The notes under the pieces: model-generated
Seen by the model: only the letters and a program-made list of their open reading frames with translations
Databases searched by the model: none
Told to the model about the DNA's origin: nothing
Virus record (IMG/VR): IMGVR_UViG_3300049215_000771
Coordinates: 434,001 to 498,000 of that record
Reading direction: 5' to 3' (one strand)
Length of the DNA stretch: 64,000 bases
Translations under genes and position numbers: made by a program
Shown here: piece by piece, positions 4,286 to 63,080 of the stretch
Layout of the letters: each line of letters starts with the position of its first letter
Position numbering within the stretch: the stretch's first letter is position 1

Positions 4286-4331
4286 TTATAGAAACGCCTC
4301 CGCAGGCCCGCTGGCAATACAACGAAGGACG

Positions 4332-5975
4332 TTAGCTTTCACAATTAGTACAAGCCAGGATGTTGCGACTAAATGCCTGTGCAGCATTGATGGAAATCTG
4401 GTAGTACAACGACTTGATTCCCATTTGCCACGCTTCGATGATGAGCGCATTCACATCCTTGATGGGAATCGAGGGATGAATCATCAAGTTGAGTGACTGC
4501 GATTGGTCAATGTACTTCTGCCGGCTTGCCGCCTGCATAATGACTTCCTTCGGGCTGATCTCGGCGAAGGTTTTGAACACATTCTTCTCCAACCCGGAAA
4601 GAAAATCCAGATGTTGAACGCTTCCTCCGTGTTTCAGAATGTCGGCCCACACTTCATCCGTGTTCTTTCCTTTCGCTTCAAGAACCTGCTCCAGATGCGG
4701 ATTTTTGACGGTCCACTTCCCCTTCTGCAAATCCTTGATGAAATAATTGGTTTTGTGTGGCTCGATACCTTCCGACACCTGCCCCAAAATAAAAGCCGAC
4801 GACTTGGTGGGCGCAATGGCAAGCAACGTGGTGTTACGCCGACCATATCCCTTCAGGACTTCTGGTTCGCCATATTCCTCGGCCATCTTCGCAGAAGCGG
4901 CGTAAGCCCTCTCCTTGATGTTCTTGGCGACTTCGACGTTGATCTGTTTCGCCTCCAGGCTCTCGAAGGCGATCATCTTGCTTTGAAGGTAGCTGTGCCA
5001 ACCAATCCAGCCAATACCGAGCGCACGGTGACGCTGGGCGAACTTGACAGCCCGCTTCATGAACCCGATCTTGCTGGCTTTCTGGATGAATTCCGTCATC
5101 ACAGCATCCAGGAAGTAAGTCAGCAACTCGACGGCGTTGGTATCTTTCCACTCGTCATACCGGAAGATATTCATGCTCGACAAATCACACACGAAGGACT
5201 CGTCACACGAGTCAGGAAGCATGATCTCGCTGCACAAATTCGAGTGCGAGATTCGCATCTTCTTGTTCTTGTAGCAGTCCACCGTGTTGTTGTTCGCATT
5301 GTCGCCGAACATGATGTACGGGAAGCCGATGTTGGCCCGGCATTCAAGTACCTTGGCCCATACTTTCCGCTTCTCGGCGTCCCCAGCAATCATCTCCTTC
5401 ATCCACCAGTCGGGCACGACCACCCCAAAAGACAAATCTTGAATGGGATTGCCCTCGCTCCGCATGGCGAGGAATTCCATGATGTCTTTGTGGTCGATGT
5501 CCAGGTAAGCGGCGAAATTGCCACGTCGGGTCCGACCCTGGGACACCACGTTGATGAGAAGGTCGAACAACTGCATGAAGTGAACACTGCCAGATGACTC
5601 GCCATTACGACGAATCTTAGAACCACGCCCACGCAGGTTGCCGAAGTAGCCAGACGTACCGCCGCCGTGCTTCGTCATCATCATGACTTCGGCGTGCGTG
5701 TAGGCAATGTCTTCGGTGTCATCAGCCATGTAGCTGCCGAAACACGAGATCGGCAGGCCACGGTCATTGCCAAAGTTCGTCCAGATGGGCGTACTGAGGC
5801 TGTACCAACCTTTCTGAATGTTTTCCTTGAACGCCTGGGCAAAACCAGGTTTGTTGAGAAGTTTTTCTGCTGCCCCGCAGATTTCATTTACCCGTTCATC
5901 GACGGTCTGCCCGTCCAAGTAGTCCCTTTCGAGAAACTGCTGAGACGCTTCTGTTAGCCATGTGTAACCTGTCAT
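4332..5975 (-). CDS. nrdA: Ribonucleotide reductase class Ia alpha subunit (short, no ATP cone)
   Basis: PISCF, SNLCSEI, APTKSSAFI, SQSLNL and KSLYY motifs. Confidence 0.95.
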   Translation of the reverse strand: MTGYTWLTEASQQFLERDYLDGQTVDERVNEICGAAEKLLNKPGFAQAFKENIQKGWYSLSTPIWTNFGNDRGLPISCFGSYMADDTEDIAYTHAEVMMMTKHGGGTSGYFGNLRGRGSKIRRNGESSGSVHFMQLFDLLINVVSQGRTRRGNFAAYLDIDHKDIMEFLAMRSEGNPIQDLSFGVVVPDWWMKEMIAGDAEKRKVWAKVLECRANIGFPYIMFGDNANNNTVDCYKNKKMRISHSNLCSEIMLPDSCDESFVCDLSSMNIFRYDEWKDTNAVELLTYFLDAVMTEFIQKASKIGFMKRAVKFAQRHRALGIGWIGWHSYLQSKMIAFESLEAKQINVEVAKNIKERAYAASAKMAEEYGEPEVLKGYGRRNTTLLAIAPTKSSAFILGQVSEGIEPHKTNYFIKDLQKGKWTVKNPHLEQVLEAKGKNTDEVWADILKHGGSVQHLDFLSGLEKNVFKTFAEISPKEVIMQAASRQKYIDQSQSLNLMIHPSIPIKDVNALIIEAWQMGIKSLYYQISINAAQAFSRNILACTNCES

Positions 5976-6949
5976 TAGAAAATATCCTCCGCTTTGATCG
6001 CTTGCACTTTCTTGGAATATGTAACTGGCTTCTTATGGAAGAAGTCAGTGTTGACTTCGGCGTAGATTTCGTCCTCAAACCACTTCACCGACTTCAACTT
6101 CTCGACATCCACATCGAAAACTTTGGTGCCGCCGATCATAGTGAGGCTATCATTGAACCTGTTCTTCACGAATTCCACCACGACATCCTTTGGCAAGAAC
6201 TCCAATTCGCCCGCCTCGAATATCCAGTCAATGATCCGGCATTCGGCGTCGAAGGCTTTCTTGCACGCACGGTACAACTTGGCGTAGAAATCGTCGTTGA
6301 ACCACTCAGGGAATTCTTTCTGAATCTGCTTGATGACATACATGCCGAACAGCGCATGGATGACTTCTTCCTTCTGCGTGGCCTGCACCACGTTGTCAAT
6401 GTCCTTCAACGCATTCATGTGCTTGTTGAAAGATTTGATGACAAGGAACTGAGAAAACAAACTGACGTTCTCAATGAAAATAGAAAACAACGTCAGTGTC
6501 AGGGTGTATGCTTCGTTGCTGTTGTCGGATGCCCCCTTCAGATATTTCTGAAGGTAATCCACTCGACCTTGAATCCACTCGTTCTCCAACAAATCGTTGA
6601 AATCGTCGTTCAGGCCCAAAACCTGAAGCAAGTGCGAGTAAGCGTCCGAGTGGCGCACTTCCGATTCGCCAAATGTCACGCCCACCTGCTCGAACTCGGC
6701 CTTTGGGAACCTGTCCCCCAGCTTCGTCCAGAACTTCTTGACGGAAACTTCGATCTGTGAAATTGCCAACATAGCGTTCTTGATGGCGCTTTGCTGGACT
6801 TTGTTCAACTTCACATGAAAATCATGGATGTCGGACGTGAAATTCCATTCACTCACCAGCCAATAGCTGTGATTGATTGCGTTCTTGTACTCCAAGATGT
6901 CAGGGTACTCGAAGGGTTTGAACGCAACCCTCTTGTCAAAAATGCTCAT
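5975..6949 (-). CDS. nrdB: Ribonucleotide reductase class I beta subunit
   Basis: ESEVRHSDAY (E-x-x-H plus radical Tyr), ENVSLFSQF and EEVIHA di-metal ligands; directly upstream of nrdA. Confidence 0.95.
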   Translation of the reverse strand: MSIFDKRVAFKPFEYPDILEYKNAINHSYWLVSEWNFTSDIHDFHVKLNKVQQSAIKNAMLAISQIEVSVKKFWTKLGDRFPKAEFEQVGVTFGESEVRHSDAYSHLLQVLGLNDDFNDLLENEWIQGRVDYLQKYLKGASDNSNEAYTLTLTLFSIFIENVSLFSQFLVIKSFNKHMNALKDIDNVVQATQKEEVIHALFGMYVIKQIQKEFPEWFNDDFYAKLYRACKKAFDAECRIIDWIFEAGELEFLPKDVVVEFVKNRFNDSLTMIGGTKVFDVDVEKLKSVKWFEDEIYAEVNTDFFHKKPVTYSKKVQAIKAEDIF

Positions 6950-9873: not shown

Positions 9874-10941
9874 TCAAGAAATTGTTTTTTCGCAGATTTG
9901 CTTCCCAATTTGAAGCAACAGGTCACGGTCCAAACCGTCCGTTCCGACTTCATCAACGTACCGGGCCAGCATCTCATCTTCCTTGTATAAGATAGCTTTG
10001 GCGTCCTGGATTACATGCTCCTCCAGTTTCTTTTTCTGCTGCTTGATCTCCAGACTCCCGAAGTTGTGTTTTTCCGACAACTCCTTGCGCATCTGAATCA
10101 GGTCCGTCGCTCCAATGTCGTCCACCACCAGCCGAACGAAATCGCCATCCAGCTTCATCTTCTTCTTCACATCTTTCTGCCGCAAGATGACGTGTTTGGG
10201 GCTGAAGTCGTTCTCGATATAGGTTTTCTTGCCCGTGTGGACGTTGAAGGCCAAGATATGCTTCTTCTGGTTGGCCTCACCGAAAGAAAGTTCCAGCGGC
10301 GACCCAACATATTCCACAATATCGTTGAGTTGCTGGGCAGCGTGGTAATGTCCCAAAAATACGTTCTTGTAATAGTCGAACAGATCGGGACTAATACGCA
10401 TCATATCTCCGTCATGCTCAATCACCACGTCCGCCGTGTGTTCTCCGTGCAGCACGGCTCCGTCGATGGCAATATGCCCCAGGCAGTATTGGGGCTTGCC
10501 AGGACTCTTTTTCAGTTGCTCCAGCGCACTGATGGGGTCGTGAGTAAAGGGAATGAAGTCCCAGGTGCTACCGGAGAACAACTGGTGCAAACGAATCGGC
10601 TTGTCGATGATCGTGACACCGGGCAGTGACGAGAACGGGATCACACTACTGATGCTGGTATTGTCGTTGAACCACAAATCATGGTTTCCCAGCAACAACC
10701 ACAAGCGAATGTCACCCAGGAGGTTGCGGGCCAAAGTTTCGTAGAGCCGCTGGTAGGTGTAAACCTCGATCTTCTGCCGGTCGTGGAGAAGGTCGCCGCC
10801 GAAAAGGATGTCTGTGATATTTCGCTTGCGGGCTGTCTTGAATACCCAATCGACCACCTTCAGACAATCCTCCATGCGCTCGACCTTGCGCTTATGGGGG
10901 TGGACATGGGCATCAGTGAATATCAAAACCTCATCAGACAT
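9874..10941 (-). CDS. SbcD/Mre11-like (T4 gp47-like) metallophosphoesterase nuclease
   Basis: DAH, GDLLH, GNHD, GHYH and YVGSP motifs; start taken at MSDEV. Confidence 0.92.
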   Translation of the reverse strand: MSDEVLIFTDAHVHPHKRKVERMEDCLKVVDWVFKTARKRNITDILFGGDLLHDRQKIEVYTYQRLYETLARNLLGDIRLWLLLGNHDLWFNDNTSISSVIPFSSLPGVTIIDKPIRLHQLFSGSTWDFIPFTHDPISALEQLKKSPGKPQYCLGHIAIDGAVLHGEHTADVVIEHDGDMMRISPDLFDYYKNVFLGHYHAAQQLNDIVEYVGSPLELSFGEANQKKHILAFNVHTGKKTYIENDFSPKHVILRQKDVKKKMKLDGDFVRLVVDDIGATDLIQMRKELSEKHNFGSLEIKQQKKKLEEHVIQDAKAILYKEDEMLARYVDEVGTDGLDRDLLLQIGKQICEKTIS

Positions 10942-12549: not shown

Positions 12550-13335
12550 ATGAGAAGGATTCTGATTGTAGGATGCCACAGAAGCGGGACCACGCTCATG
12601 CGCTTGGTTCTCGACTCGCACCCCCTGATTCACTGTTTCGACGAATGGAAGGCATACGACGCCCTGAAGAATGACGAATTCGCAAATGCTAAGAACGCCG
12701 AAATACTCGGCTTCAAAATCCCCAACTGGACCGAATATCTGGTTGATTGCGACGACTTCAAAAAATACTACCAGGATGATGATTACATTATTTTCATGCT
12801 GAGAGATGTGCGTGCCGTCATTGCCTCAATGCTCTCCCTGCGCACCAAACCAGACCGAGTTTGGTTCCAGGGAGCCGTCAACGCCGTCACCAAGAAATGG
12901 CCCATCGACCCCAAACGAAAATTTCTACAAACCTGTGGGGACGAACTCGCCAAAATAGAAACTATGCCCCTGGCCGATTACAGAAAAGCTGCTTTGTACT
13001 GGAGATACAAAACCTCCAAATACCTGGAGATGGTGGCTCTCGGCTGGCGTGTTGTACCTGTGTTCTACGAGAAGTTCGTAGACAGGCCCGAATCACACAT
13101 GCGTATTTTGATGAAAACTCTAAATATACCGTGGAGTGATATGCTCATGCAACACCACCAACTGGCCCATGACGAAGTAACCAATGGCATGGCTGTAGGT
13201 AACACCAATGCCCAGCGTGCAGTAGACACGGGGTCTGTAAACAAATGGGAAGATATTTTGACCGCCGATCAGCAACAAGCCATCATGGAAACAGCGGGCG
13301 AGTTGAATGACTACATTTCCCATCTAAGGAGATAA
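12550..13335 (+). CDS. Sulfotransferase family protein
   Basis: GCHRSGTT 5'-PSB loop, RDVRAVIAS 3'-PB motif, YEKFV..PE; AAGGAGG RBS before ATG 12550. Confidence 0.85.
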   Translation: MRRILIVGCHRSGTTLMRLVLDSHPLIHCFDEWKAYDALKNDEFANAKNAEILGFKIPNWTEYLVDCDDFKKYYQDDDYIIFMLRDVRAVIASMLSLRTKPDRVWFQGAVNAVTKKWPIDPKRKFLQTCGDELAKIETMPLADYRKAALYWRYKTSKYLEMVALGWRVVPVFYEKFVDRPESHMRILMKTLNIPWSDMLMQHHQLAHDEVTNGMAVGNTNAQRAVDTGSVNKWEDILTADQQQAIMETAGELNDYISHLRR

Positions 13336-15492
13336 ATGGCAGTTAGCTACGCACAACGAGTTCGGGAAAATACCACGACAACCGGCACAGGGACAATCGA
13401 CCTGGGCGGTGCATCAGCAGGCTACCAGGCTATTTTGGGGGCCGCTGATGACTTTGGCACGATCAATTCCGGCGATACCATCTACTATCTCATTCTCGAT
13501 CAAGTTCACGGCGATTGGGAAGTTGGGCGTGGCACTGTTACATCGGGCAGCCCAAACACCCTCAGTCGAGATGTTGTTTCAGCCAGCAGCAACAGCAACA
13601 GCTTGGTAGACTTCAAATCTGGCACTAAATTCGTTCAACTCCGACAACCAGAACAATACGCCTTCACTCAGCCAGGCAACTTGGTTTTCGCCAGCCCAGC
13701 AGATGGCAGTACAGGCTCGCCCGCCTTCCGTGCCCTGGTAACTGCCGACTTCCCTGCCAGCGGCGCTTCGGCTGCCAGCTATGGTGATGCTACCGACGTA
13801 CCTCAAATCACGGTAGATGCAACAGGAAGGATCACGTCAATAACCACCACGGCCATAACTGGCGTTCCACCAGGAGGGAATGCGGGCGGCGATCTAACAG
13901 GAACTTATCCTAATCCAACACTTATCACCACTGGTGTTGGTGCTGGAACCTACGGCGATGCTACTGATGTACCGCAAATTACTGTCGATGCCAACGGACG
14001 CATTACGTCCGCAACTACTGTAGCTATTTCTGGTGGTTCTCCCACGGGCAGCGCCGGCGGTGACTTGTCGGGAACTTACCCAAACCCAACTGTAGCTCAG
14101 TTGCAAGGCTACCCGGTGTCCAACACAGCCCCAACAGATCAGTATGTACTAACCTGGAGTGCTGGTGGTGGTGCATGGCAACCTGCTGCGGCAAGCGGCG
14201 GTGGCGGAAACACATCTGTAGGCAGCTTGTTGAACGTACAAATTTTCGCCACCAATGGCAGCTATACCTACACGCCAACTACCGGCATGTCTATTTGTAT
14301 TGTTGAATGTGTAGGTTCTGGTGCGGGTGGTGGCGGTGCAACTAGAGGCTCCAGCCAATGTGGGGCCGGTGCCGGTGGCGGTGGTGGCGGGTATTCGAGA
14401 TCGACACTTACTTCTTCTGCAATTGGCAGCAGTCAAACCATCACGGTAGGAGCAGGTGGCAGTGGTGGAGCCAATACAGGCGGCACAGGTAGCAACGGAA
14501 ACCCTTCATCGCTCGGAAGTCTCGTAATCGCCAACGGCGGCACAGGTGGTGCTGGGCAAACAACAGGCTCGGCAGTTGGCATCGTCGCAGGTGGCGCAGG
14601 AGGAACAACAGGTACGGGAGATTTGGCTATCGTCGGTGGCTATGGAGGCCAAGGCATCAGACTTTCTGGTACGGTATGCACCAGCGGACCCGGAGGCGGG
14701 GGTTTTTATTCTCGTTCTGGCCAAAGCCTGAACACCAACGCACAAGGAACAAATGGAATCGGACCTGGAGGCGGGGGCAGCGGCGGCTGCGCCACATCTG
14801 CGAACCAATTGGGTGGCACTGGTGCTGATGGTCTTGTAGTTATTTGGGAATATGGCAATCTGCTGAACGTGCAAATCTTTAACGTCAATGGAAGCTACAC
14901 CTACACACCAACAACCGGCATGAATACTTGTGTTGTTGAATGTCTAGGCTCTGGCGCTGGAGGCGGGGGTGCAACAAGGGGATCAAGTGCTTGTGGTGTT
15001 GGTGCCGGTGGGGGCGGTGGCAGTTACAGCCGGTCTAAACTAACAGCACTACAAGTTGCAGGAGGCCAAACCGTCACAGTAGGAGCAGGTGGCAGCGGTG
15101 GAGCTAACACGGGCGGCACGGGCGGTAGCGGCAATACTTCTTCATTCGGCAGTTTCGTCAGCGCCAACGGCGGTACAGGCGGTGTCGGTATGACAACAGG
15201 CTCCACGGCGGCAATCTCGGCGGGCGGTGCTGGCGGAACAGCAGGCACAGGAGATTTCGCTATTGCTGGCGGCTATGGCGGCAATGGCATTCGGCTCTCC
15301 GGTAGCGTTTGCACAAGTGGTGGTGGCGGCGGCACGGTGTACGGCCCGATTGGTCGTAGCCTAAACGCAAATGCTGTCGGAAGCAATGGCGCTACACCAG
15401 GAGCCGGGGGCAGCGGTGGTTGTGCCATATCTGCCGCCCAGCTAGGAGGAAGCGGCGCTGATGGAATGGTGGTTATTTGGGAATACAGCTAA
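13336..15492 (+). CDS. Glycine-rich tail fibre/structural protein with a duplicated C-terminal domain
   Basis: N-terminal [12 protein letters not shown] motif, GGDLxGTYPNPT repeats and two tandem Gly-rich domains. Confidence 0.7.
14227..15486 (+). repeat. Tandem duplication of a ~209-codon domain (14227-14853 and 14860-15486)
   Basis: Both copies run LLNVQIF...TYTPTTGM...VIWEY, with high amino-acid identity and many synonymous differences. Confidence 0.9.
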
Positions 15493-27031: not shown

Positions 27032-27759
27032 TCTTCATCTTCCTTGAAGATTTCATCGGCGGGGATCAGTTTGGCGGTGCCGTCTTTGATGGAATCAACA
27101 CGCTCCATCAACTCCCCCAACTTCTCACGTTTGTCCTGGGGATCGCCGTGGAAGCTAATCTCCCAATAAATAGCGTCCAGTACGTCCTGGAGGCTGAAGC
27201 AGCGTTCACCTGCCACGATGGGCTTGCGGCCAACCTTGTAGTCCTTCGGCTTGAAAAACTCTACAGTTTTGTCAAGTTTAACCGGCAAATCGGCCAACTT
27301 GTACATCGGGCTGAAGTCGATGGCCCAGCGCATGATGCCATCGCTGCTGTGTTCGGCGTTCTTGCCAAGGGCGGGGCCAACACCGTGGAAACTGGGGCTA
27401 AGTTCGATGTAGGCAGGGTCTTTGGTGAACTTGCTGTAGTCGGCGTGCCAGTAAATTTCCAGGTGAGTCATCTTCTCATCCGGGTCTTCTTCCTCGCCGC
27501 TCAGGTCGGGTTCCTCGGCCTGAGCATGGAAAGCGTCGATGGCCCCACACCAGGAGTATTGGGCAATGAACATCTTCAGCGCTTTGTACTGATCGACAAT
27601 GCGGAAGATGTCGAGAAGGGTAACGCCATCCTCGATCTCGCAGGCGTCACGCAGATGGCTCCAGACCGACAGCTTCTTCACCCGGCGACGGATGTATTTC
27701 TGCTTGTCGCCGTTCCATTTCTCATAGAACAAGCCAGCCTTGTTGAAGAATACAGTCAT
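27028..27759 (-). CDS. Hypothetical protein
   Basis: 243-aa ORF coupled to neighbours. Confidence 0.6.
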   Translation of the reverse strand: MTVFFNKAGLFYEKWNGDKQKYIRRRVKKLSVWSHLRDACEIEDGVTLLDIFRIVDQYKALKMFIAQYSWCGAIDAFHAQAEEPDLSGEEEDPDEKMTHLEIYWHADYSKFTKDPAYIELSPSFHGVGPALGKNAEHSSDGIMRWAIDFSPMYKLADLPVKLDKTVEFFKPKDYKVGRKPIVAGERCFSLQDVLDAIYWEISFHGDPQDKREKLGELMERVDSIKDGTAKLIPADEIFKEDEE

Positions 27760-34404: not shown

Positions 34405-34790
34405 CGGGTTTTCCTCTCCGTTTTGATGTCGTCCCTGGTGTCGAACACGCCGTCAGGTCCGGCTGAAACCACAATCACCCGCTCGCCGGTACGGATGATG
34501 CCGGTCGATTGGTAGGTGATTCGGAGAGCATTTCCCCAGGGATCAATCGGCACTTCTCCGTGGAAGTGATGGTATTTGTAATTGTTCTTTCCGTCTCGAT
34601 CTCCGTGAAGCTGGTCGGCGAAAGATTCAACTTGTCTGTTGGCTTCTTGCTTCTGCCGTTCCAGTTCCGCCCATCTCTCGGCATTTTGTTGGACATAGGC
34701 ATTCCACCCGAACCAGCCCAGCCCGCCGAAAACAACAAGGCCCAGGAAGAAAAGCCCGATAATCCAAGGATGCTTCACTGTCATGACCAT
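34401..34790 (-). CDS. GspG (type II secretion pseudopilin)-like domain membrane protein
   Basis: N-terminal TM helix, then DPWGN...VSAGPDGVFDTRDDI, the GspG C-terminal motif. Confidence 0.65.
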   Translation of the reverse strand: MVMTVKHPWIIGLFFLGLVVFGGLGWFGWNAYVQQNAERWAELERQKQEANRQVESFADQLHGDRDGKNNYKYHHFHGEVPIDPWGNALRITYQSTGIIRTGERVIVVSAGPDGVFDTRDDIKTERKTR

Positions 34791-35398
34791 TTCCCTTCAA
34801 GGTAGGATTGGATGACCTGCGGGTACATGATCCTTTCGGCTTCTTGCACCCTAGAGGCCAGGGAAACCAACGTATCGTCCTCACGCACTGGCACCCTGGT
34901 TTGCGCCAAGATCATTCCGTGGTCATACTCGTTATCCACAACATGAACGGTACTACCAGTCCATTTTTCTTTTGCCGCCATTACAGCCTGGTAGACATGA
35001 AGGCCATACATGCCCTTGCCGCCGTATTTGGGGAGCAAAGAAGGGTGGATGTTGAGTATTTTTCCTTCCCATTCAGGAGTCACGACCAGTTTGCAAGTTT
35101 TCACGACCAGACTTGGTGATTTGTGCCGGTTACGTTTGGCATGGCCGAGTATCTTGCCGCTGTGTTCTTCGTCGCTGTACTTGCCGTACCAGTCGGTATC
35201 GTGGCCGAAGTCCTTCGGAATGATGACGTAGGGAACCAGTCCATTCCGCTTGGCAACTTCCGACGCCCCACATTCCCGCTTATTGGTGATTACAGCGTCG
35301 ATCCGGGCGTTTTTGATGATACCAGACTCAATCGCCTTGGCGATGGCGTTCAAAATCGTGCCAGCGCCGGAAACGAGAACCACCAATCGTTTCTTCAT
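34781..35398 (-). CDS. purN: Phosphoribosylglycinamide formyltransferase-like
   Basis: VLVSGAGT, LNIHPSLLPKYGG, GSTVHVV and YDHG motifs; the usual LAGxM segment is replaced. Confidence 0.8.
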   Translation of the reverse strand: MKKRLVVLVSGAGTILNAIAKAIESGIIKNARIDAVITNKRECGASEVAKRNGLVPYVIIPKDFGHDTDWYGKYSDEEHSGKILGHAKRNRHKSPSLVVKTCKLVVTPEWEGKILNIHPSLLPKYGGKGMYGLHVYQAVMAAKEKWTGSTVHVVDNEYDHGMILAQTRVPVREDDTLVSLASRVQEAERIMYPQVIQSYLEGKWS

Positions 35399-38877: not shown

Positions 38878-38882
38878 ACAAG

Positions 38883-38967
38883 CGGAAGGTGAGGGAATCG
38901 AACCCTCTTCCCTTTCGGGAAACGCTTTTCAAGAGCGCCGCAGCCAACCAATATCTGCCTACCTTCC
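38883..38967 (-). tRNA. tRNA-Ser(TGA)
   Basis: GGAAGGT/ACCTTCC acceptor, G73, loop CTTGAAA, long V arm; CCA not encoded. Confidence 0.92.
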
Positions 38968-48301: not shown

Positions 48302-49369
48302 TTATCTAATCTCGACCTTCAATTCCTTCATCCGGTCACGAAGCTGTTGCTGACGGGCGTTGATTTCCTCGTTCGTCAGCACCCGATCCATCGACCTGTA
48401 GGTGATGCGGTAGCAATGAGATTCCCGCTCACCTTTTTTGAAAGAATCCAGCAGCTTGACACTTTCAACCAGATCGCCGTGTAGATCACGAACAATCTGG
48501 TAGAAATCGTTCTCGCTGTAGCCAGCCGGAATCCAGAACGCCATGTCTTTGACACACGGCGGCTGGACCGAGAATGGCTTGAATTTAGAGTCCAGGTCTT
48601 TGAACTGGTTGAGGAAGCGTTCGTCCTCACTCCAGAACAATCGGATGTCCGGGATGTCGAAAACAAGCATTGCCAGCCGCTCCAGGCCAACACCGAACGC
48701 CCAGCCCTGGGTGTAGTCACTGTAGTTGTCACCAAGAGGCCCAAGGGCTTCACAGCGCTTGATAACATCGGGATGGACGATGCCACAACCCGCTACTTCC
48801 AGCCACTCGCCATTCCATTCGATCTCCAACTCCCAAGAAGGGTTCGTGAACGGGAAGTAGGAGTCCACGAATCTGTAGTTCAACTGCCGGTTATGTGGGC
48901 TGTACGGGATGTTGAGAACTCGTTCTATCATGTCGAACATATGTTCCTTCAACATCCTCTCAAGGTCCAATGTCTGATATTTCGCCTTGTGAAAAAGGCC
49001 CACGCCTTCAACCTGGTGGAACACCGGGTAATGCGTGCGATCAATGGTGTCTCGCCGGTACACGTCGCCACAGACCAGGAACTTCATGTGTCCCTTGTTG
49101 ATGAGCATGTGCTGATGGGCGCTGGTATGCGTCCTCAGAACGTGCTTCTCGTCAACGTAGTAGGTGTCAGAAGGCCGGCGAGAGGGATGGTCGGGTGGAA
49201 TCAGCAGATGGTCGAAGTTATCTTCCACTGTCACCACCGGCCCGAACGTCTCGTAGATTTCGTGGCCGGGGAAGGCCATATAGATAGCCTTCTTGACAAT
49301 TTCGAGCGGGTGTCGTTCCTTCAGATGGAGGTTACGCCCCATTTTTTCTTTGATGCTCGGCGGGATCAT
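48302..49369 (-). CDS. pheS: Monomeric (mitochondrial-type) phenylalanyl-tRNA synthetase
   Basis: HPSR..SDTYY, LRTHTSAHQ, YRRD.ID.THYPVFHQ, YFPFTNPS and GWAFGVGLERL motifs, fused to a C-terminal FDX-ACB (KDMAFW...SHCYRITYRS..R.LTNEEIN). Confidence 0.93.
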   Translation of the reverse strand: MIPPSIKEKMGRNLHLKERHPLEIVKKAIYMAFPGHEIYETFGPVVTVEDNFDHLLIPPDHPSRRPSDTYYVDEKHVLRTHTSAHQHMLINKGHMKFLVCGDVYRRDTIDRTHYPVFHQVEGVGLFHKAKYQTLDLERMLKEHMFDMIERVLNIPYSPHNRQLNYRFVDSYFPFTNPSWELEIEWNGEWLEVAGCGIVHPDVIKRCEALGPLGDNYSDYTQGWAFGVGLERLAMLVFDIPDIRLFWSEDERFLNQFKDLDSKFKPFSVQPPCVKDMAFWIPAGYSENDFYQIVRDLHGDLVESVKLLDSFKKGERESHCYRITYRSMDRVLTNEEINARQQQLRDRMKELKVEIR

Positions 49370-49536: not shown

Positions 49537-49627
49537 CGGAAGAGAAGGGAATTGAACCCTTGCCGGACAATTAAGCCGGGCCAGTTTTCGAGACTGGTGC
49601 AGCAATCACAACATCTGCCTCTCTTCC
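49537..49627 (-). tRNA. tRNA-Ser(CGA)
   Basis: CCAGT-CTCGAAA-ACTGG, V arm, G73. Confidence 0.9.
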
Positions 49628-53713: not shown

Positions 53714-54213
53714 GTTCGTAGCCAACACTCATTTACACGGTTCAACGACGACGGCGACATGCGCCGGCGTTTCCATCGGCCTCCAGTTCATGGCCTTGTA
53801 GTCGAAAAACATATCGACAAAACCCAGGACCAGTTCCTTCTCCAACGGCAGTTTGTAATTGTCCACGATGGTCAACTGCCCTACCCGCCCCATCTGCGGA
53901 ACGTCCATCTCATAATAGCACAACTGGAGAGCGTGCAGTCCGAGACGGATGTACTTGTTGTACTCCTTGCAAGCCGAAGTAGCGTCCGGCCCATGAATCC
54001 TCAACATCGGGCCGACCATTTCTTTGTCCACTGTCTCGTCTGCCTGAGCAGTTTTGCACGCCTTCAGGAAGTCGAATGGCGGATCAGCCTTCGCCTTTGC
54101 CTTCATCTGTTCGACCAGCGACTCCAATTCCTCCCAAGAAACTTCCTTGTAAAACAAGTCGCCGTTTTCGTCTTTCAGGTTGAAACCAAACATTTCAGGT
54201 TCTCCAAGGCGAG

Positions 54214-54289
54214 TAGCCGGGAGGGGACTCGAACCCCTAAGACTCTAGGTTTGAGCTAGAGATGTCTGCCAAGATTGCATCACCCGGCC
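54214..54289 (-). tRNA. tRNA-Leu(CAA) with a short variable loop
   Basis: TCTAG-CTCAAAC-CTAGA; variable region GTCTT (5 nt); A73. Confidence 0.85.
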
Positions 54290-55678: not shown

Positions 55679-55755
55679 TGCCCAGGGTGGGACTCGAACC
55701 CACAAGACCCTCGTTCTGAGCGAGAGATGTCTGCCTATTTTTGCATCACCTGGGC
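55679..55755 (-). tRNA. tRNA-Leu(CAG) with a short variable loop
   Basis: TCTCG-CTCAGAA-CGAGG; variable region GTCTT; A73. Confidence 0.85.
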
Positions 55756-55870: not shown

Positions 55871-57052
<1,182 letters not shown>

Positions 57053-57735: not shown

Positions 57736-57826
57736 TTGGCAAGGTGGGATTCGATACCCACACGGTAGATTCGTCAACCTACCAACCCCCTCTAGCGGGG
57801 GCTGCGTCTTCTTCCGCCACTTGCCA
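57736..57826 (-). tRNA. tRNA-like RNA with an aberrant anticodon loop (GCTAGA) and 8-nt T loop
   Basis: TGGCAAG/CTTGCCA, A73; CCCCC-GCTAGA-GGGGG; 8-bp V arm; GTGGG-TATCGAAT-CCCAC. Confidence 0.6.
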
Positions 57827-57827
57827 G

Positions 57828-57903
57828 TGTCCAAGGTGGGACTCGAACCCACAAAATCACCAGATTCTCAACCTGGCGGCTTTGCCAATTTGCCTACCTG
57901 GAC
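57828..57903 (-). tRNA. tRNA-Leu(GAG) with a short variable loop
   Basis: CCAGG-TTGAGAA-TCTGG; variable region TGATTTT; A73. Confidence 0.85.
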
Positions 57904-58347
57904 AATTCTCTGGCTATGACAATTAGGACATAGAAACTGCAAGTTTTCTTTCCTGTTGTCGAGCCAGTTATCGTTCTTGTGGTCAACTTCCAACACCAAC
58001 GGTTTGCCGTTCCATACATCCGTTTGACCACAACACGCACATTTATACTCAACTCCCGATTCGATCAATGCCCGCCGCAGCATATACCCGTGAGTTCTGC
58101 GGTCGCCCTCGGACAACACCAGTATTTCAGACCAGTGCTTCTTCAGTCCGTTCGTCAATCCCTTCCGTGACGCTTGCCCCAAAAAATGAGTCGTATCAAT
58201 CTCGTATCTTTTGAGAAGAGCCTTAATATGCGATTGACTCCCCCCGGTCAGCTTGAGGCCCAACATTCGCAAAACATCACGAATGCAAATGGACTCCTTG
58301 GCAATTTCCCCAAGCAACTCTTTGGTGTATTTCGTCTTGTTTCCCAT
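57868..58347 (-). mobile_element. Free-standing HNH endonuclease whose ORF ends inside tRNA-Leu(GAG)
   Basis: Paralogue of 46027-46473; LEVDHKNDNWLDNRKENLQFLCPNCH; TGcTATAAT 6 nt before the ATG. Confidence 0.85.
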
Positions 58348-61632: not shown

Positions 61633-61698
61633 AGATTTCGCCATTTGCTCCGCTGTTGATGGCATTGATCGACTCATCATCCATCCTTGCTCTACCAG

Positions 61699-61772
61699 TG
61701 CCCAGGGTCGGACTTGAACCGACGACCTTCTGCTCTTCAGGCAGACGCTACTACCAACTGAGCTACCTGGGC
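61699..61772 (-). tRNA. tRNA-Phe(GAA)
   Basis: Canonical cloverleaf; TCTGC-CTGAAGA-GCAGA. Confidence 0.93.
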
Positions 61773-61790: not shown

Positions 61791-61900
61791 AGGGCGTGCA
61801 GGATGATGGGACTCGAACCCACCTGTACCTACCTTGCACGGCTTGCGCCGCTTGGGGACTCGCTGCCAACTGCTCATTACGGTCACACCCTGCACGCCCT
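61791..61900 (-). ncRNA. T-arm-containing RNA closed by a 15-bp helix
   Basis: AGGGCGTGCAGGGTG/CATCCTGCACGCCCT; GTGGG-TTCGAGT-CCCAT; GCGGC-GCAA-GCCGT; followed by a T-run. Confidence 0.55.
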
Positions 61901-62505
61901 TGGTCCTTAGCCCCTCACTCGCCCGTGAACCGTTCGCTTCCTGCGACGGTTGAACCGGAAGTTATTCCAGTAGGCTTTTCGCCTCCAGACGCCTTGGGAC
62001 TTTTTCTTCTTCCTTTGTTTCAACTTTGCCTCCGCAGTTGAGGAATTGGTAGTTTCCAACGCCGTTGCAGAGGACGCAGATGACCATTTTATTTACTCCC
62101 AGGTTGCGGCCTTTTCTTCAACCAAGGCGTATGCCGCTTCGCCTGACACTCGGCTGTGCAGAAATGCAGCAGCCGCCTTTTGCCACGAACCGTGTGATAT
62201 GGGCCTTCAATCACTGTGCGGCAACCGTCGCACACAACTCCACCCATTTTTAACACGACTCGTCTCCCGAACGCTCGAAAAGTGAACCCTTCACTTCATG
62301 TCCGATGCCGACACACTTGACGCCAGCCTGGACAACGTGACTTCCCAGCCGCCCCTTGTGGACCTTCACGACCTTGCTACACCAGGGACATTTGACTTCC
62401 TTCAGCTTCGACAAATCTTTCTTCTCATAGCCCCTGTGAACCTTCTTTCGTTCAAGGTGCTTGCCGGTATTTGTCGGAATGTTCTTGTTTGCCATGTTAC
62501 ACCAG

Positions 62506-62623
62506 CGGATCAGAACGGGACTCGAACCCGCAACATGAATTTGGGTAGCGATTTTGCTACAAGACCCCCATGTACCTTACCTTTTTAGGGCTTAGTGCTT
62601 CTGCCGTTTCTGCCACCTGATCC
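62506..62623 (-). tRNA. Oversized Ser-like tRNA-like RNA (8-bp acceptor, AAA-type loop, ~41-nt V arm)
   Basis: GGATCAGG/TCTGATCC, G73; GCGGG-TTCGAGT-CCCGT; ACT-AA-GCC-CTAAAAA-GGT-AA-GGT. Confidence 0.55.
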
Positions 62624-62625
62624 AG

Positions 62626-62713
62626 CGGAAGGTGCGGGAGTCGAACTCGCAACACCCCTTTCAGGGTGTGTCCCGTTTCGAGCGGGGTGGGCCTGCCAAT
62701 GCCCAAACCTTCC
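62626..62713 (-). tRNA. tRNA-Ser(CGA), second copy
   Basis: CCCG-CTCGAAA-CGGG, V arm, G73; one T-stem mismatch. Confidence 0.85.
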
Positions 62714-62991
62714 AGTTACATTCTTGCTCTGACATCACACCATCGAATCCGACGAACGGTGTAAGCACCACGAAGTTCACCATCTTCAATCGCCGCCAGC
62801 GCCTCTTCTTCCGTATCATACGACATCGTGTATATCGACGCCGTGTTGAGGTTGAGAATTCGCCATTCCTTCGACCGACCATCAAAAATAGCCGTCTCGA
62901 AGATGAGAGTACCAGTCCTTCGGACACCCTTCAACCACTCCATGTCTTCAGGACCGCCAGTGATGAAATCACCCATAACAAATCCTCCAAG

Positions 62992-63080
62992 CGGAAGGTG
63001 AGGGAGTTGAACCCTCAGCCCCCTTGCGGGGGCACCAACTTAGCAGGTTGGCGTGACGAACCGATAGTCACCTACCTTCC
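62992..63080 (-). tRNA. tRNA-Ser(GCT)
   Basis: CCAAC-CTGCTAA-GTTGG, V arm, G73. Confidence 0.92.

What the first reader, a model, noticed from the sequence alone, without database searches (positions are those of the whole stretch)
62506..62623. 118-nt Ser-like tRNA with 8/5 fold, AAA loop and branched giant V arm
An 8-bp acceptor plus 5-bp T stem is the bacterial tRNA-Sec geometry. G73 and a long V arm favour SerRS, yet the loop CTAAAAA presents AAA (Phe codon UUU) on a stem interrupted by an AA/AA internal loop. If it decodes, it would insert Ser at UUU.
Basis: partly seen in the sequence, partly recalled or inferred. Interest (0 to 1): 0.6.

Follow-up and report, generated by a model that had tools for sequence, protein, structure and literature searches.

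The report
Odd tRNA-like gene in a megaphage
A 118-nt tRNA-shaped gene sits two bases behind a serine tRNA in the tRNA array of a 533-kb phage from moss metagenomes; it is real and looks derived from a serine tRNA, but its weak anticodon and D arms, and the normal use of UUU for phenylalanine, make it more likely a processed non-decoding relic than a Phe-to-Ser decoder.

Summary
They are an 8-layer acceptor stem, a canonical T arm, the loop CUAAAAA on a stem with a tandem A·A interruption, a possible G73, and a 41-nt variable arm. That arm is one interrupted hairpin, not a branched one. The acceptor/T scaffold is far beyond chance, and the gene lies 2 nt behind tRNA-Ser(CGA) in a megaphage tRNA array. 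Default ARAGORN misses it, and Rfam tRNA scores 22.8 bits against a threshold of 29. Shortening the V arm in silico makes ARAGORN call tRNA(AAA). The anticodon arm folds no better than shuffles, and the D stem keeps only 2 pairs. All four mismatched layers lie in the D and anticodon arms. No homologue was found anywhere. A distant relative has tRNA-Ser(UGA) at this position. TTT codons in three conserved phage genes align with Phe (10 of 14) or Val/Leu, never Ser. Best reading: a diverged Ser-type tRNA copy kept as an end-processed, non-decoding tRNA-like RNA. Ser-at-UUU decoding is not excluded but unlikely (about 6%). The genome holds about 17 other aberrant or insert-bearing tRNA-like genes and its own EF-Tu.

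The parts
62506..62623 (-). the whole 118-nt tRNA-like gene (RNA 5' end at 62623, or 62622 in the 7/5 register)
62616..62623 (-). acceptor stem, 5' strand (GGAUCAGG)
   Evidence: pairs with 62507-62514; probability about 1.0 for 7 pairs and 0.41 for the closing G·U
62597..62613 (-). degenerate D arm: 2 Watson-Crick pairs, then A·A and G·A; the loop keeps the GG
   Evidence: D region most like the phage's tRNA-Leu genes
62575..62595 (-). anticodon-like arm: 7 layers with a tandem A·A; loop CUAAAAA at 62582-62588; AAA at 62584-62586
   Evidence: (z +0.2, -2.5 kcal/mol)
62533..62573 (-). giant variable arm, 41 nt: 7 bp, an internal loop, 5 bp and a 6-nt loop; unbranched
   Evidence: (z -2.1; pair probabilities 0.74-0.99)
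62515..62531 (-). T arm, 5 bp with loop UUCGAGU; a 20-nt stretch covering most of this arm is identical to the same part of the phage tRNA-Asp gene
62506..62514 (-). acceptor stem 3' strand (62507-62514) plus the unpaired G (62506); no CCA is encoded; the trailer CUGG is the same as after tRNA-Ser(CGA)
62625..62713 (-). upstream partner tRNA-Ser(CGA), 2 nt from the element (likely a dimeric precursor)
62250..62495 (-). downstream orphan ORF (81 aa); its ATG lies 10 nt after the element's 3' end

Best explanation
The element is a diverged copy of a type II, serine-type phage tRNA gene. It survives as a tRNA-shaped, end-processed RNA that no longer decodes.

It lies in the tRNA array of a 533-kb megaphage from moss metagenomes. 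It sits 2 nt behind tRNA-Ser(CGA), at the place where a distant relative carries tRNA-Ser(UGA).

Shown: the acceptor stem, T arm and basal V stem pair perfectly, although the acceptor sequence differs from every other tRNA in the genome. The D and anticodon stems carry all four mismatched layers.

Inferred mechanism: the RNA is co-transcribed with tRNA-Ser(CGA) as a dimeric precursor. Its acceptor/T minihelix is what is kept by selection, because RNase P cleavage at its 5' end releases the 3' end of tRNA-Ser(CGA). 3' processing after its own acceptor stem would free the downstream message. The anticodon-like loop (AAA) and the expanded V arm would then be drift products, not decoding parts. 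Whether the RNA is still serylated is open.
For: - Context: the genome encodes several aminoacyl-tRNA synthetases, its own EF-Tu, a tail fibre and more than 56 tRNAs.
- The scaffold is far beyond chance.
- Ser-type ends, trailer and V-arm linkers match the neighbouring tRNA-Ser genes.
- The relative LR756511.1 has Ser(CGA), a 5-nt spacer, then Ser(UGA) at the matching position.
- All 4 mismatched layers fall in the D and anticodon arms (4 of 11). None falls in the acceptor, T or basal V stems (0 of 20). This gives p = 0.0105, a post hoc test.
- The anticodon arm is no better than shuffles, and the D stem has probability 0.02.
- Rfam is sub-threshold with the anticodon arm unaligned.
- TTT means Phe in conserved phage genes, and a canonical tRNA-Phe(GAA) is nearby.
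- A second aberrant tRNA-like gene of this phage (G000 498893-499001) has an orthologue in a related contig. That orthologue has a fully covarying acceptor stem and a different long hairpin in place of an anticodon arm. Non-decoding tRNA-like RNAs are therefore kept in this lineage.
- Canonical tRNA plus aberrant tRNA-like pairs with 0-2 nt spacers occur three times in the genome.
Against: - No orthologue of this element exists in any collection searched, so there is no covariation test.
- There is no evidence of expression. RNA-library contigs cover its neighbours but not the element, and contigs cannot show RNA ends.
- The 12-bp V arm is better than chance, which a pure processing role does not explain.
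- The phage's own EF-Tu could in principle tolerate odd tRNAs.
- The mismatch-distribution test is post hoc and rests on small numbers.
- The dependence of an upstream tRNA on its dimer partner is recalled from phage T4 work, not tested here.
Confidence: 0.45

Rival explanations
1. A tRNA mimic with a function of its own in trans. It would be processed, and perhaps serylated, through its intact acceptor, T and V arms. It would act as a decoy or sponge, for example for host tRNA-targeting defence nucleases or for SerRS. Its A-rich loops, which display the Lys codon AAA, might also pair with other RNAs.
For: - Constraint appears on exactly the parts that SerRS and the maturation enzymes read: the acceptor, T and V arms.
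- The V arm is more stable than shuffles.
- The lineage keeps other non-decoding tRNA-like RNAs.
- The genome holds many aberrant tRNA-like genes.
Against: No target, no partner protein, no conservation and no expression data. The idea is not distinguishable from the best explanation with sequence alone.
Confidence: 0.2
2. A dead pseudogene. It would be a recent duplicate of a type II tRNA that is simply decaying, with no selected role.
For: - It is a singleton with no homologue.
- It has mismatches in the D and anticodon stems, an A34 anticodon that bacteria avoid, and a sub-threshold Rfam score.
- The neighbouring tRNA-Ser(CGA) itself carries two stem mismatches.
Against: - The 13 acceptor and T layers and 12 V-arm pairs are all intact.
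- The acceptor differs from the phage's Ser tRNAs at four pairs, all of them compensated.
- The sequence is identical in four moss metagenome runs and two other assemblies.
Confidence: 0.15
3. An insert-bearing tRNA of the megaphage 'enigmatic intron' kind. The extra sequence (the V-arm tip, or an 18-nt block in the 3' half of the anticodon stem) would be removed or tolerated, yielding a working type II tRNA.
For: - ARAGORN calls tRNA(AAA) once 18-40 nt are deleted.
- About 17 other tRNA-like genes of this genome carry inserts.
- Lak megaphage tRNAs with unexplained introns are on record (PMC6784885).
- V-arm tips can be replaced by hairpins without loss of activity in engineered allo-tRNAs (PMC7590224).
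Against: - The phage has no archaeal-type splicing endonuclease and no RtcB ligase.
- There is no group I intron signature.
- Even after deletion, the anticodon stays AAA on a mismatched stem.
Confidence: 0.1
4. One reading: a Ser-accepting tRNA with anticodon AAA that inserts Ser at UUU, perhaps delivered by the phage's own EF-Tu.
For: - It has Ser-type ends, a possible G73, C11-G24, and an uninterrupted 7-bp basal V stem with Ser-like linkers.
- SerRS ignores the anticodon (PMC7609411; PMC5389517).
- The anticodon loop has canonical form.
- A phage EF-Tu gene lies 5.5 kb away.
Against: - TTT aligns with Phe in 10 of 14 cases and never with Ser in conserved phage genes.
- The anticodon arm is worth -2.5 kcal/mol, with a tandem A·A and one or two extra layers.
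- The D stem has 2 bp.
- A 13-bp acceptor/T branch weakens EF-Tu binding in tRNA-Sec (PMC7609411).
- A34 is unmodified.
- A competing tRNA-Phe(GAA) is present.
Confidence: 0.06

Closest known systems
allo-tRNAs (Mukai et al. 2017, PMC5389517)
   Same: [quoted passage not shown] Their anticodons are for non-Ser codons. They are found in Acidobacteria, soil metagenomes and phages. Some are thought inactive or regulatory.
   Different: allo-tRNAs keep a 12-bp acceptor branch (8/4 or 9/3). This element reads 8/5 (13 bp) or 7/5 with G-1. Its V arm is about twice as long, and its anticodon and D stems are mismatched.
bacterial tRNA-Sec (Rfam RF01852; PMC7609411)
   Same: A possible 8/5 acceptor/T geometry, G73, a long V arm and an extended anticodon stem.
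   Different: No UCA anticodon, no 6-bp D stem with a 4-nt loop, no Rfam match to the Sec model, and no SelA or SelB in the phage.
canonical bacterial and phage tRNA-Ser (the neighbours at 62625-62713 and 62991-63080)
   Same: GGA...UCC-G ends, the 3' trailer, the V-arm linkers, the T arm and the loop pattern CUNNAAA.
   Different: Anticodon AAA, a 7-layer anticodon stem with a tandem A·A, a 2-bp D stem, a 41-nt V arm, and a different but compensated acceptor sequence.
Lak megaphage tRNAs with 'enigmatic introns' (Devoto et al. 2019, PMC6784885)
   Same: Over-long tRNA genes in tRNA-rich phage genomes of about 540 kb, with unexplained inserted sequence.
   Different: Lak inserts are predicted in the anticodon loop and are conserved between genomes. 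Here the extra sequence is in the V arm and there are no relatives to compare.
dimeric tRNA precursors and the two small stable RNAs of the phage T4 tRNA cluster (recalled from memory, not checked here)
   Same: Tightly spaced tRNA pairs processed from one precursor, and 120-140-nt stable RNAs of unknown function encoded among phage tRNAs.
   Different: No sequence relation was tested. This is a lead only.

Membership tests
canonical tRNA (Rfam RF00005 / ARAGORN) | score at or above the curated threshold | tested here: not met
   22.8 bits against a gathering score of 29. ARAGORN at default makes no call. It calls the gene only after the V region is shortened in silico.
canonical tRNA (Rfam RF00005 / ARAGORN) | acceptor stem and T arm with a canonical T loop | tested here: met
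   7 Watson-Crick pairs plus G·U; a 5-bp T stem; loop UUCGAGU.
canonical tRNA (Rfam RF00005 / ARAGORN) | 3-4 bp D stem and 5-bp anticodon stem | tested here: not met
   The D stem has 2 Watson-Crick pairs (probability 0.02). The anticodon stem has 7 layers with a tandem A·A and z +0.2.
bacterial tRNA-Sec | 8/5 acceptor/T branch (13 bp) | tested here: inconclusive
   The 8th pair is G·U with probability 0.41. A 7/5 register with G-1:C73 is also possible.
bacterial tRNA-Sec | UCA anticodon, 6-bp D stem with a 4-nt loop, and a match to RF01852 | tested here: not met
   The loop is CUAAAAA, the D stem has 2 bp, and there is no RF01852 hit on the element.
bacterial tRNA-Sec | SelA/SelB machinery | tested here: not met
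   Neither is present in the phage genome. The host is unknown.
tRNA-Ser identity set (SerRS substrates) | G73, G1-C72/G2-C71/A3-U70, C11-G24, and a long V arm with an unbulged basal stem | tested here: met
   All are present in the 8-bp register. The basal V stem is 7 bp without a bulge. A bulge would block SerRS (PMC7590224).
tRNA-Ser identity set (SerRS substrates) | actual serylation | not testable with these tools
   This needs an in vitro charging assay.
allo-tRNA | 12-bp acceptor branch split 8/4 or 9/3 | tested here: not met
   The T stem has 5 layers behind an 8-layer acceptor, giving 13.
allo-tRNA | long V arm, long anticodon stem, and a non-Ser anticodon on a Ser-type body | tested here: met
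megaphage tRNAs with introns (Lak type) | insert within the anticodon loop, conserved among related genomes | tested here: not met
   The extra sequence is in the V arm. No relative carries the gene.

The most novel reading that the evidence does not exclude
The phage makes a serine-charged tRNA with anticodon AAA and an aptamer-sized V arm. Its own EF-Tu delivers it, causing deliberate, perhaps conditional, Phe-to-Ser mistranslation at the rare UUU codon. More generally, the megaphage would maintain a set of aminoacylated, non-canonical tRNA-like RNAs for uses other than standard decoding.
Probability: 0.06. Interest if true: 0.85.

Novelty: new variant of a known kind. Interest (0 to 1): 0.4.

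Why it matters
Huge phages carry large tRNA sets, and some of these genes are over-long for unknown reasons. This gene is one clear, well-delimited example. It has a Ser-type tRNA body in which the parts read by the maturation enzymes and by SerRS are intact, while the decoding parts are not. If it is stably made, it would show that megaphages keep tRNA-shaped RNAs for jobs other than decoding, such as precursor processing, decoys or amino-acid carriers. If it decodes, it would be a natural sense-codon missense tRNA in a virus. The same genome offers about 17 further aberrant tRNA-like genes and its own EF-Tu, which makes it a good system for testing these ideas.

Tried and rejected
**Homologue searches, all blank for the element**
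- Back-translated searches of both flanking orphan ORFs in IMG/VR.
- An exact 19-nt anticodon-arm pattern in IMG/VR.
- Word searches of both ORFs in 5.8 billion proteins, which found only themselves.
- A metagenome scan with the conserved upstream protein gave 4 distant loci carrying Tyr and Ser tRNAs only.
- The 146-kb relative contig G001 has a syntenic array but no Ser genes and no homologue.
- A covariance model of the element found only itself and ordinary type II tRNAs in G000, G001, LR756511.1, LR756500.1 and Tunturiibacter phage Tunturi_5.
- Two other assemblies are identical, so they show no variation.

**Expression**
- Metatranscriptome contigs cover 62622-62772 and 62086-62352 but not the element. 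Contigs cannot show RNA ends or levels, so this is not evidence either way.

**Intron readings**
- ARAGORN at an 80% threshold offers a CUA anticodon with a 22-nt intron. I rejected it because position 33 is C, the stem has an A·G pair, the V region is unstructured, and the phage has no splicing endonuclease or RtcB.
- A nested 75-nt tRNA (positions 43-117) appears only at the 80% threshold, with a 6-nt loop. Rejected.

**Other readings rejected**
- Plus-strand reading: the loop would show UUU (Lys), but the T loop would be non-canonical.
- tmRNA: none was called.
- Stop-codon recoding of the genome: code 11 ORFs already cover 88%.
- No promoter-like site lies nearby.

Full report
**Context.** The window is G000:434001-498000 of a 532,729-bp IMG/VR virus record, cut from a 673-kb contig. 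The DNA recurs in moss metagenome runs.

The window encodes CTP synthase, ribonucleotide reductase, an SbcC-like nuclease, a tail-fibre protein and several aminoacyl-tRNA synthetases. It also encodes a bona fide EF-Tu (TIGR00485, 590 bits) and a monomeric PheRS-like protein.

ARAGORN finds 56 tRNAs in the genome. The window's second half is an array of type II tRNAs (all Ser and Leu isoacceptors, plus Tyr) on the minus strand, interspersed with small ORFs. The genome is a huge phage with a large translation toolkit. Code 11 ORFs cover 88% of it, so there is no gross stop-codon recoding.

**The observation.**
- an 8-layer acceptor stem (7 Watson-Crick pairs plus G·U);
- a 5-bp T stem with loop UUCGAGU;
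- a 7-layer anticodon-like stem with a tandem A·A, around the loop CUAAAAA;
- a 41-nt V arm;
- one unpaired G after the stem.

The V arm is a single interrupted hairpin, not a branched one. The 8th acceptor pair has probability 0.41, and Rfam aligned a 7/5 register with C as discriminator. The 8/5 geometry is therefore possible, not established.

The D stem keeps 2 of 4 pairs (probability 0.02). The anticodon arm is worth -2.5 kcal/mol and is no better than shuffles (z +0.2). The V arm is moderately better than shuffles (z -2.1).

The acceptor/T scaffold is far beyond chance: 1.25 are expected per shuffled genome, against 78 observed. The gene begins 2 nt after tRNA-Ser(CGA).

Default ARAGORN misses it, and Rfam tRNA gives 22.8 bits against a threshold of 29. 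An in-silico deletion scan shows this is largely due to V-arm length. Once the V region is shortened, ARAGORN calls a tRNA with anticodon AAA in 354 of 403 calls.

**Origin.** Several features tie the element to the phage's Ser tRNAs:
- It starts GGA and ends UCC-G, followed by CUGG, like the flanking tRNA-Ser genes.
- Single-nucleotide linkers flank the V stem, as in tRNA-Ser(CGA).
- The basal V pairs (ACAU/AUGU) match those of tRNA-Ser(CGA) (ACAC/GUGU) with one compensated change.
- The loop follows the Ser pattern CUNNAAA.

Its D region resembles the phage's tRNA-Leu genes. A 20-nt stretch covering most of its T arm is identical to the same part of tRNA-Asp.

In the distant relative LR756511.1 (SbcC-like protein 41% identical), the Ser cluster reads GCU, GGA, CGA, a 5-nt spacer, then UGA, with no extra gene. 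The element therefore occupies the slot of tRNA-Ser(UGA). The window's working Ser(UGA) lies elsewhere, at 38882-38967. I infer that the element is a diverged Ser(UGA)-type copy. Its loop CUAAAAA is two substitutions from CUUGAAA.

**Constraint pattern.** The acceptor differs from the Ser consensus at four pairs, all of them compensated. The T stem and the 7 basal V pairs are intact. All four mismatched layers lie in the D and anticodon stems, giving p = 0.0105 in a post hoc test. This is not the pattern of uniform decay. It is also not the pattern of a decoder. It fits selection on the parts read by RNase P, the 3'-end processing enzymes, the CCA-adding enzyme and SerRS.

**Does UUU mean Ser here?** TTT is the minor Phe codon, 25 against 92 TTC in six conserved genes. 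I aligned three conserved phage genes with solved homologues:

| Phage gene | TTT codons aligned | Aligned with Phe | Aligned with Val/Leu |
|---|---|---|---|
| EF-Tu | 1 | 1 | 0 |
| CTP synthase | 7 | 5 | 2 |
| AspRS | 6 | 4 | 2 |
| Total | 14 | 10 | 4 |

No TTT codon aligns with Ser. A canonical tRNA-Phe(GAA) lies at 61698-61772. A reassignment is excluded. Only low-level or conditional mis-incorporation remains possible.

Structural arguments against decoding are inferences from the literature. An 8-bp acceptor lowers EF-Tu affinity about 100-fold in tRNA-Sec (PMC7609411). The anticodon stem is one or two layers too long and contains a tandem A·A. A34 has no known deaminase context here.

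Two points work in its favour. SerRS reads G73 and the V arm, not the anticodon (PMC7609411). Enlarged V-arm tips are tolerated in engineered allo-tRNAs, whereas a bulge in the basal stem blocks SerRS (PMC7590224). The element has no such bulge. The phage encodes no SerRS N-domain, SelA, SelB, splicing endonuclease or RtcB.

**Relatives and expression.** No homologue was found by any route. Other assemblies and a second moss population are identical across the element. Metatranscriptome contigs cover the neighbouring tRNA-Ser(CGA)/ORF and the downstream ORF, but not the element, and contigs cannot show RNA ends. There is therefore neither covariation nor expression evidence.

**Genome-wide picture.** With introns allowed, ARAGORN adds nine over-long tRNA genes. 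A scaffold scan finds more.
- Five genes share one conserved module of about 45 nt where the anticodon loop should be.
- A tRNA-Lys(CUU) gene carries a 21-nt insert that pairs with its own anticodon.
- Two further Ser-ended genes of 109 and 150 nt lie just beyond the window.
- The 109-nt gene has an orthologue in the related contig G001. That orthologue has a completely covarying acceptor stem and a different long hairpin in place of the anticodon arm. This shows the lineage keeps non-decoding tRNA-like RNAs.

Megaphage tRNAs with unexplained introns are on record for Lak phages (PMC6784885; also PMC13037316). Ser-type allo-tRNAs with non-Ser anticodons, some of them inactive, are known from Acidobacteria and phages (PMC5389517).

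**Verdict.** The gene is real and Ser-tRNA-derived. The most likely reading (0.45) is a non-decoding, end-processed tRNA-like RNA whose maintained minihelix serves maturation of the Ser(CGA)-element precursor and the downstream message.

| Rival reading | Confidence |
|---|---|
| tRNA mimic with a trans role | 0.20 |
| Dead pseudogene | 0.15 |
| Insert-bearing tRNA that is repaired or tolerated | 0.10 |

It is a new variant within the known, poorly understood class of aberrant phage and allo-type tRNAs. Interest is moderate.

Noticed in passing
G000 871-995, 4872-4971, 6212-6337, 14780-14905, 34759-34889 (all +; outside the window); also L044 about 4290-4420 (-) and L048 about 10540-10620 (-): Five tRNA-shaped genes have different, fully paired acceptor and T stems but share one conserved structured module of about 45 nt (core TTTGTCCTWCGGGAATG ... 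GGGATTACAT) where the anticodon loop should be. The same module, with compensatory changes in its outer stem, sits in a tRNA-like gene of an unrelated AT-rich IMG/VR phage contig. Rfam has no match..
   Followed up: partly
G000 13184-13278 (+): A tRNA-Lys(CUU) gene scores well in Rfam (62 bits) and carries a 21-nt insert in the anticodon loop. The insert's CAAG pairs with the anticodon CUU plus G, like a eukaryal or archaeal pre-tRNA intron helix. The phage has no splicing endonuclease or RtcB. No other tRNA-Lys was called..
   Followed up: partly
G000 498893-499001 and 498731-498880 (-), 0.9-1 kb beyond the window end; L017 16079-16182 (= G001 76079-76182, -): Two more Ser-ended (GGA...CCG) tRNA-like genes of 109 and 150 nt carry long hairpins in place of a normal anticodon arm. 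The 109-nt gene has an orthologue in the related contig with a wholly different but paired acceptor stem, U73, and a different 17-bp arm..
   Followed up: partly
window 55871-57052 (-): A phage-encoded full-length EF-Tu lies inside the tRNA array (TIGR00485 equivalog, 590 bits). It is 73.5% identical over a 200-residue tblastn match to the related contig..
   Followed up: yes
window 48302-49369 (-): A 355-aa PheRS-like protein with a class II core (tRNA-synt_2d) plus a FDX-ACB domain. This is the single-chain architecture known from mitochondrial PheRS..
   Followed up: no
window 54213-54289, 55679-55755, 57827-57903 (-); L017 18382-18914 (-): 76-77-nt tRNAs have a short (class I) variable loop, A73 and Leu anticodons (CAA, CAG, GAG). 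They sit beside a full set of normal long-arm tRNA-Leu genes and are conserved in the related contig. Bacterial tRNA-Leu is otherwise always class II..
   Followed up: no
window 57736-57826 (-); G000 121393-121540 (+); G000 80837-80930 (+): Suppressor-type tRNAs are present: two class I tRNAs with anticodon CUA, a type II Leu-like one showing CUA in a 6-nt loop, and an 8-bp-acceptor Ser-ended tRNA with UCA. Yet standard-code ORFs cover 88% of the genome..
   Followed up: partly
window 61798-61892 (-): Another aberrant 95-nt tRNA-like gene, with a Pro-type CAGGG acceptor, a perfect T arm and an unrecognisable body. It lies 25 nt upstream of tRNA-Phe(GAA)..
   Followed up: no
G000 27217-27315 (+): A tRNA with a clean anticodon arm (UAU) and a 31-nt variable region. 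That region holds a second 5-bp hairpin with a 7-nt loop reading CUGAUUA, which shows the other Ile anticodon, GAU..
   Followed up: no
window 49537-49627 (-): A second Ser(CGA)-type tRNA is missed by ARAGORN at default. The Ser(CGA) next to the finding has an A·C mismatch in its T stem and a C·A mismatch at 27:43..
   Followed up: no
whole record: IMG/VR labels the 532,729-bp record a provirus. It is cut from a 673,178-bp JGI contig, so about 140 kb more of the same contig lies outside the record. The best cultured-phage tRNA hit is to a Tunturiibacter (Acidobacteriota) jumbo phage, a weak hint at the host..
   Followed up: no
window 57868-58347 (-): An HNH endonuclease ORF lies inside the tRNA array, with a homologue in the related contig..
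   Followed up: no
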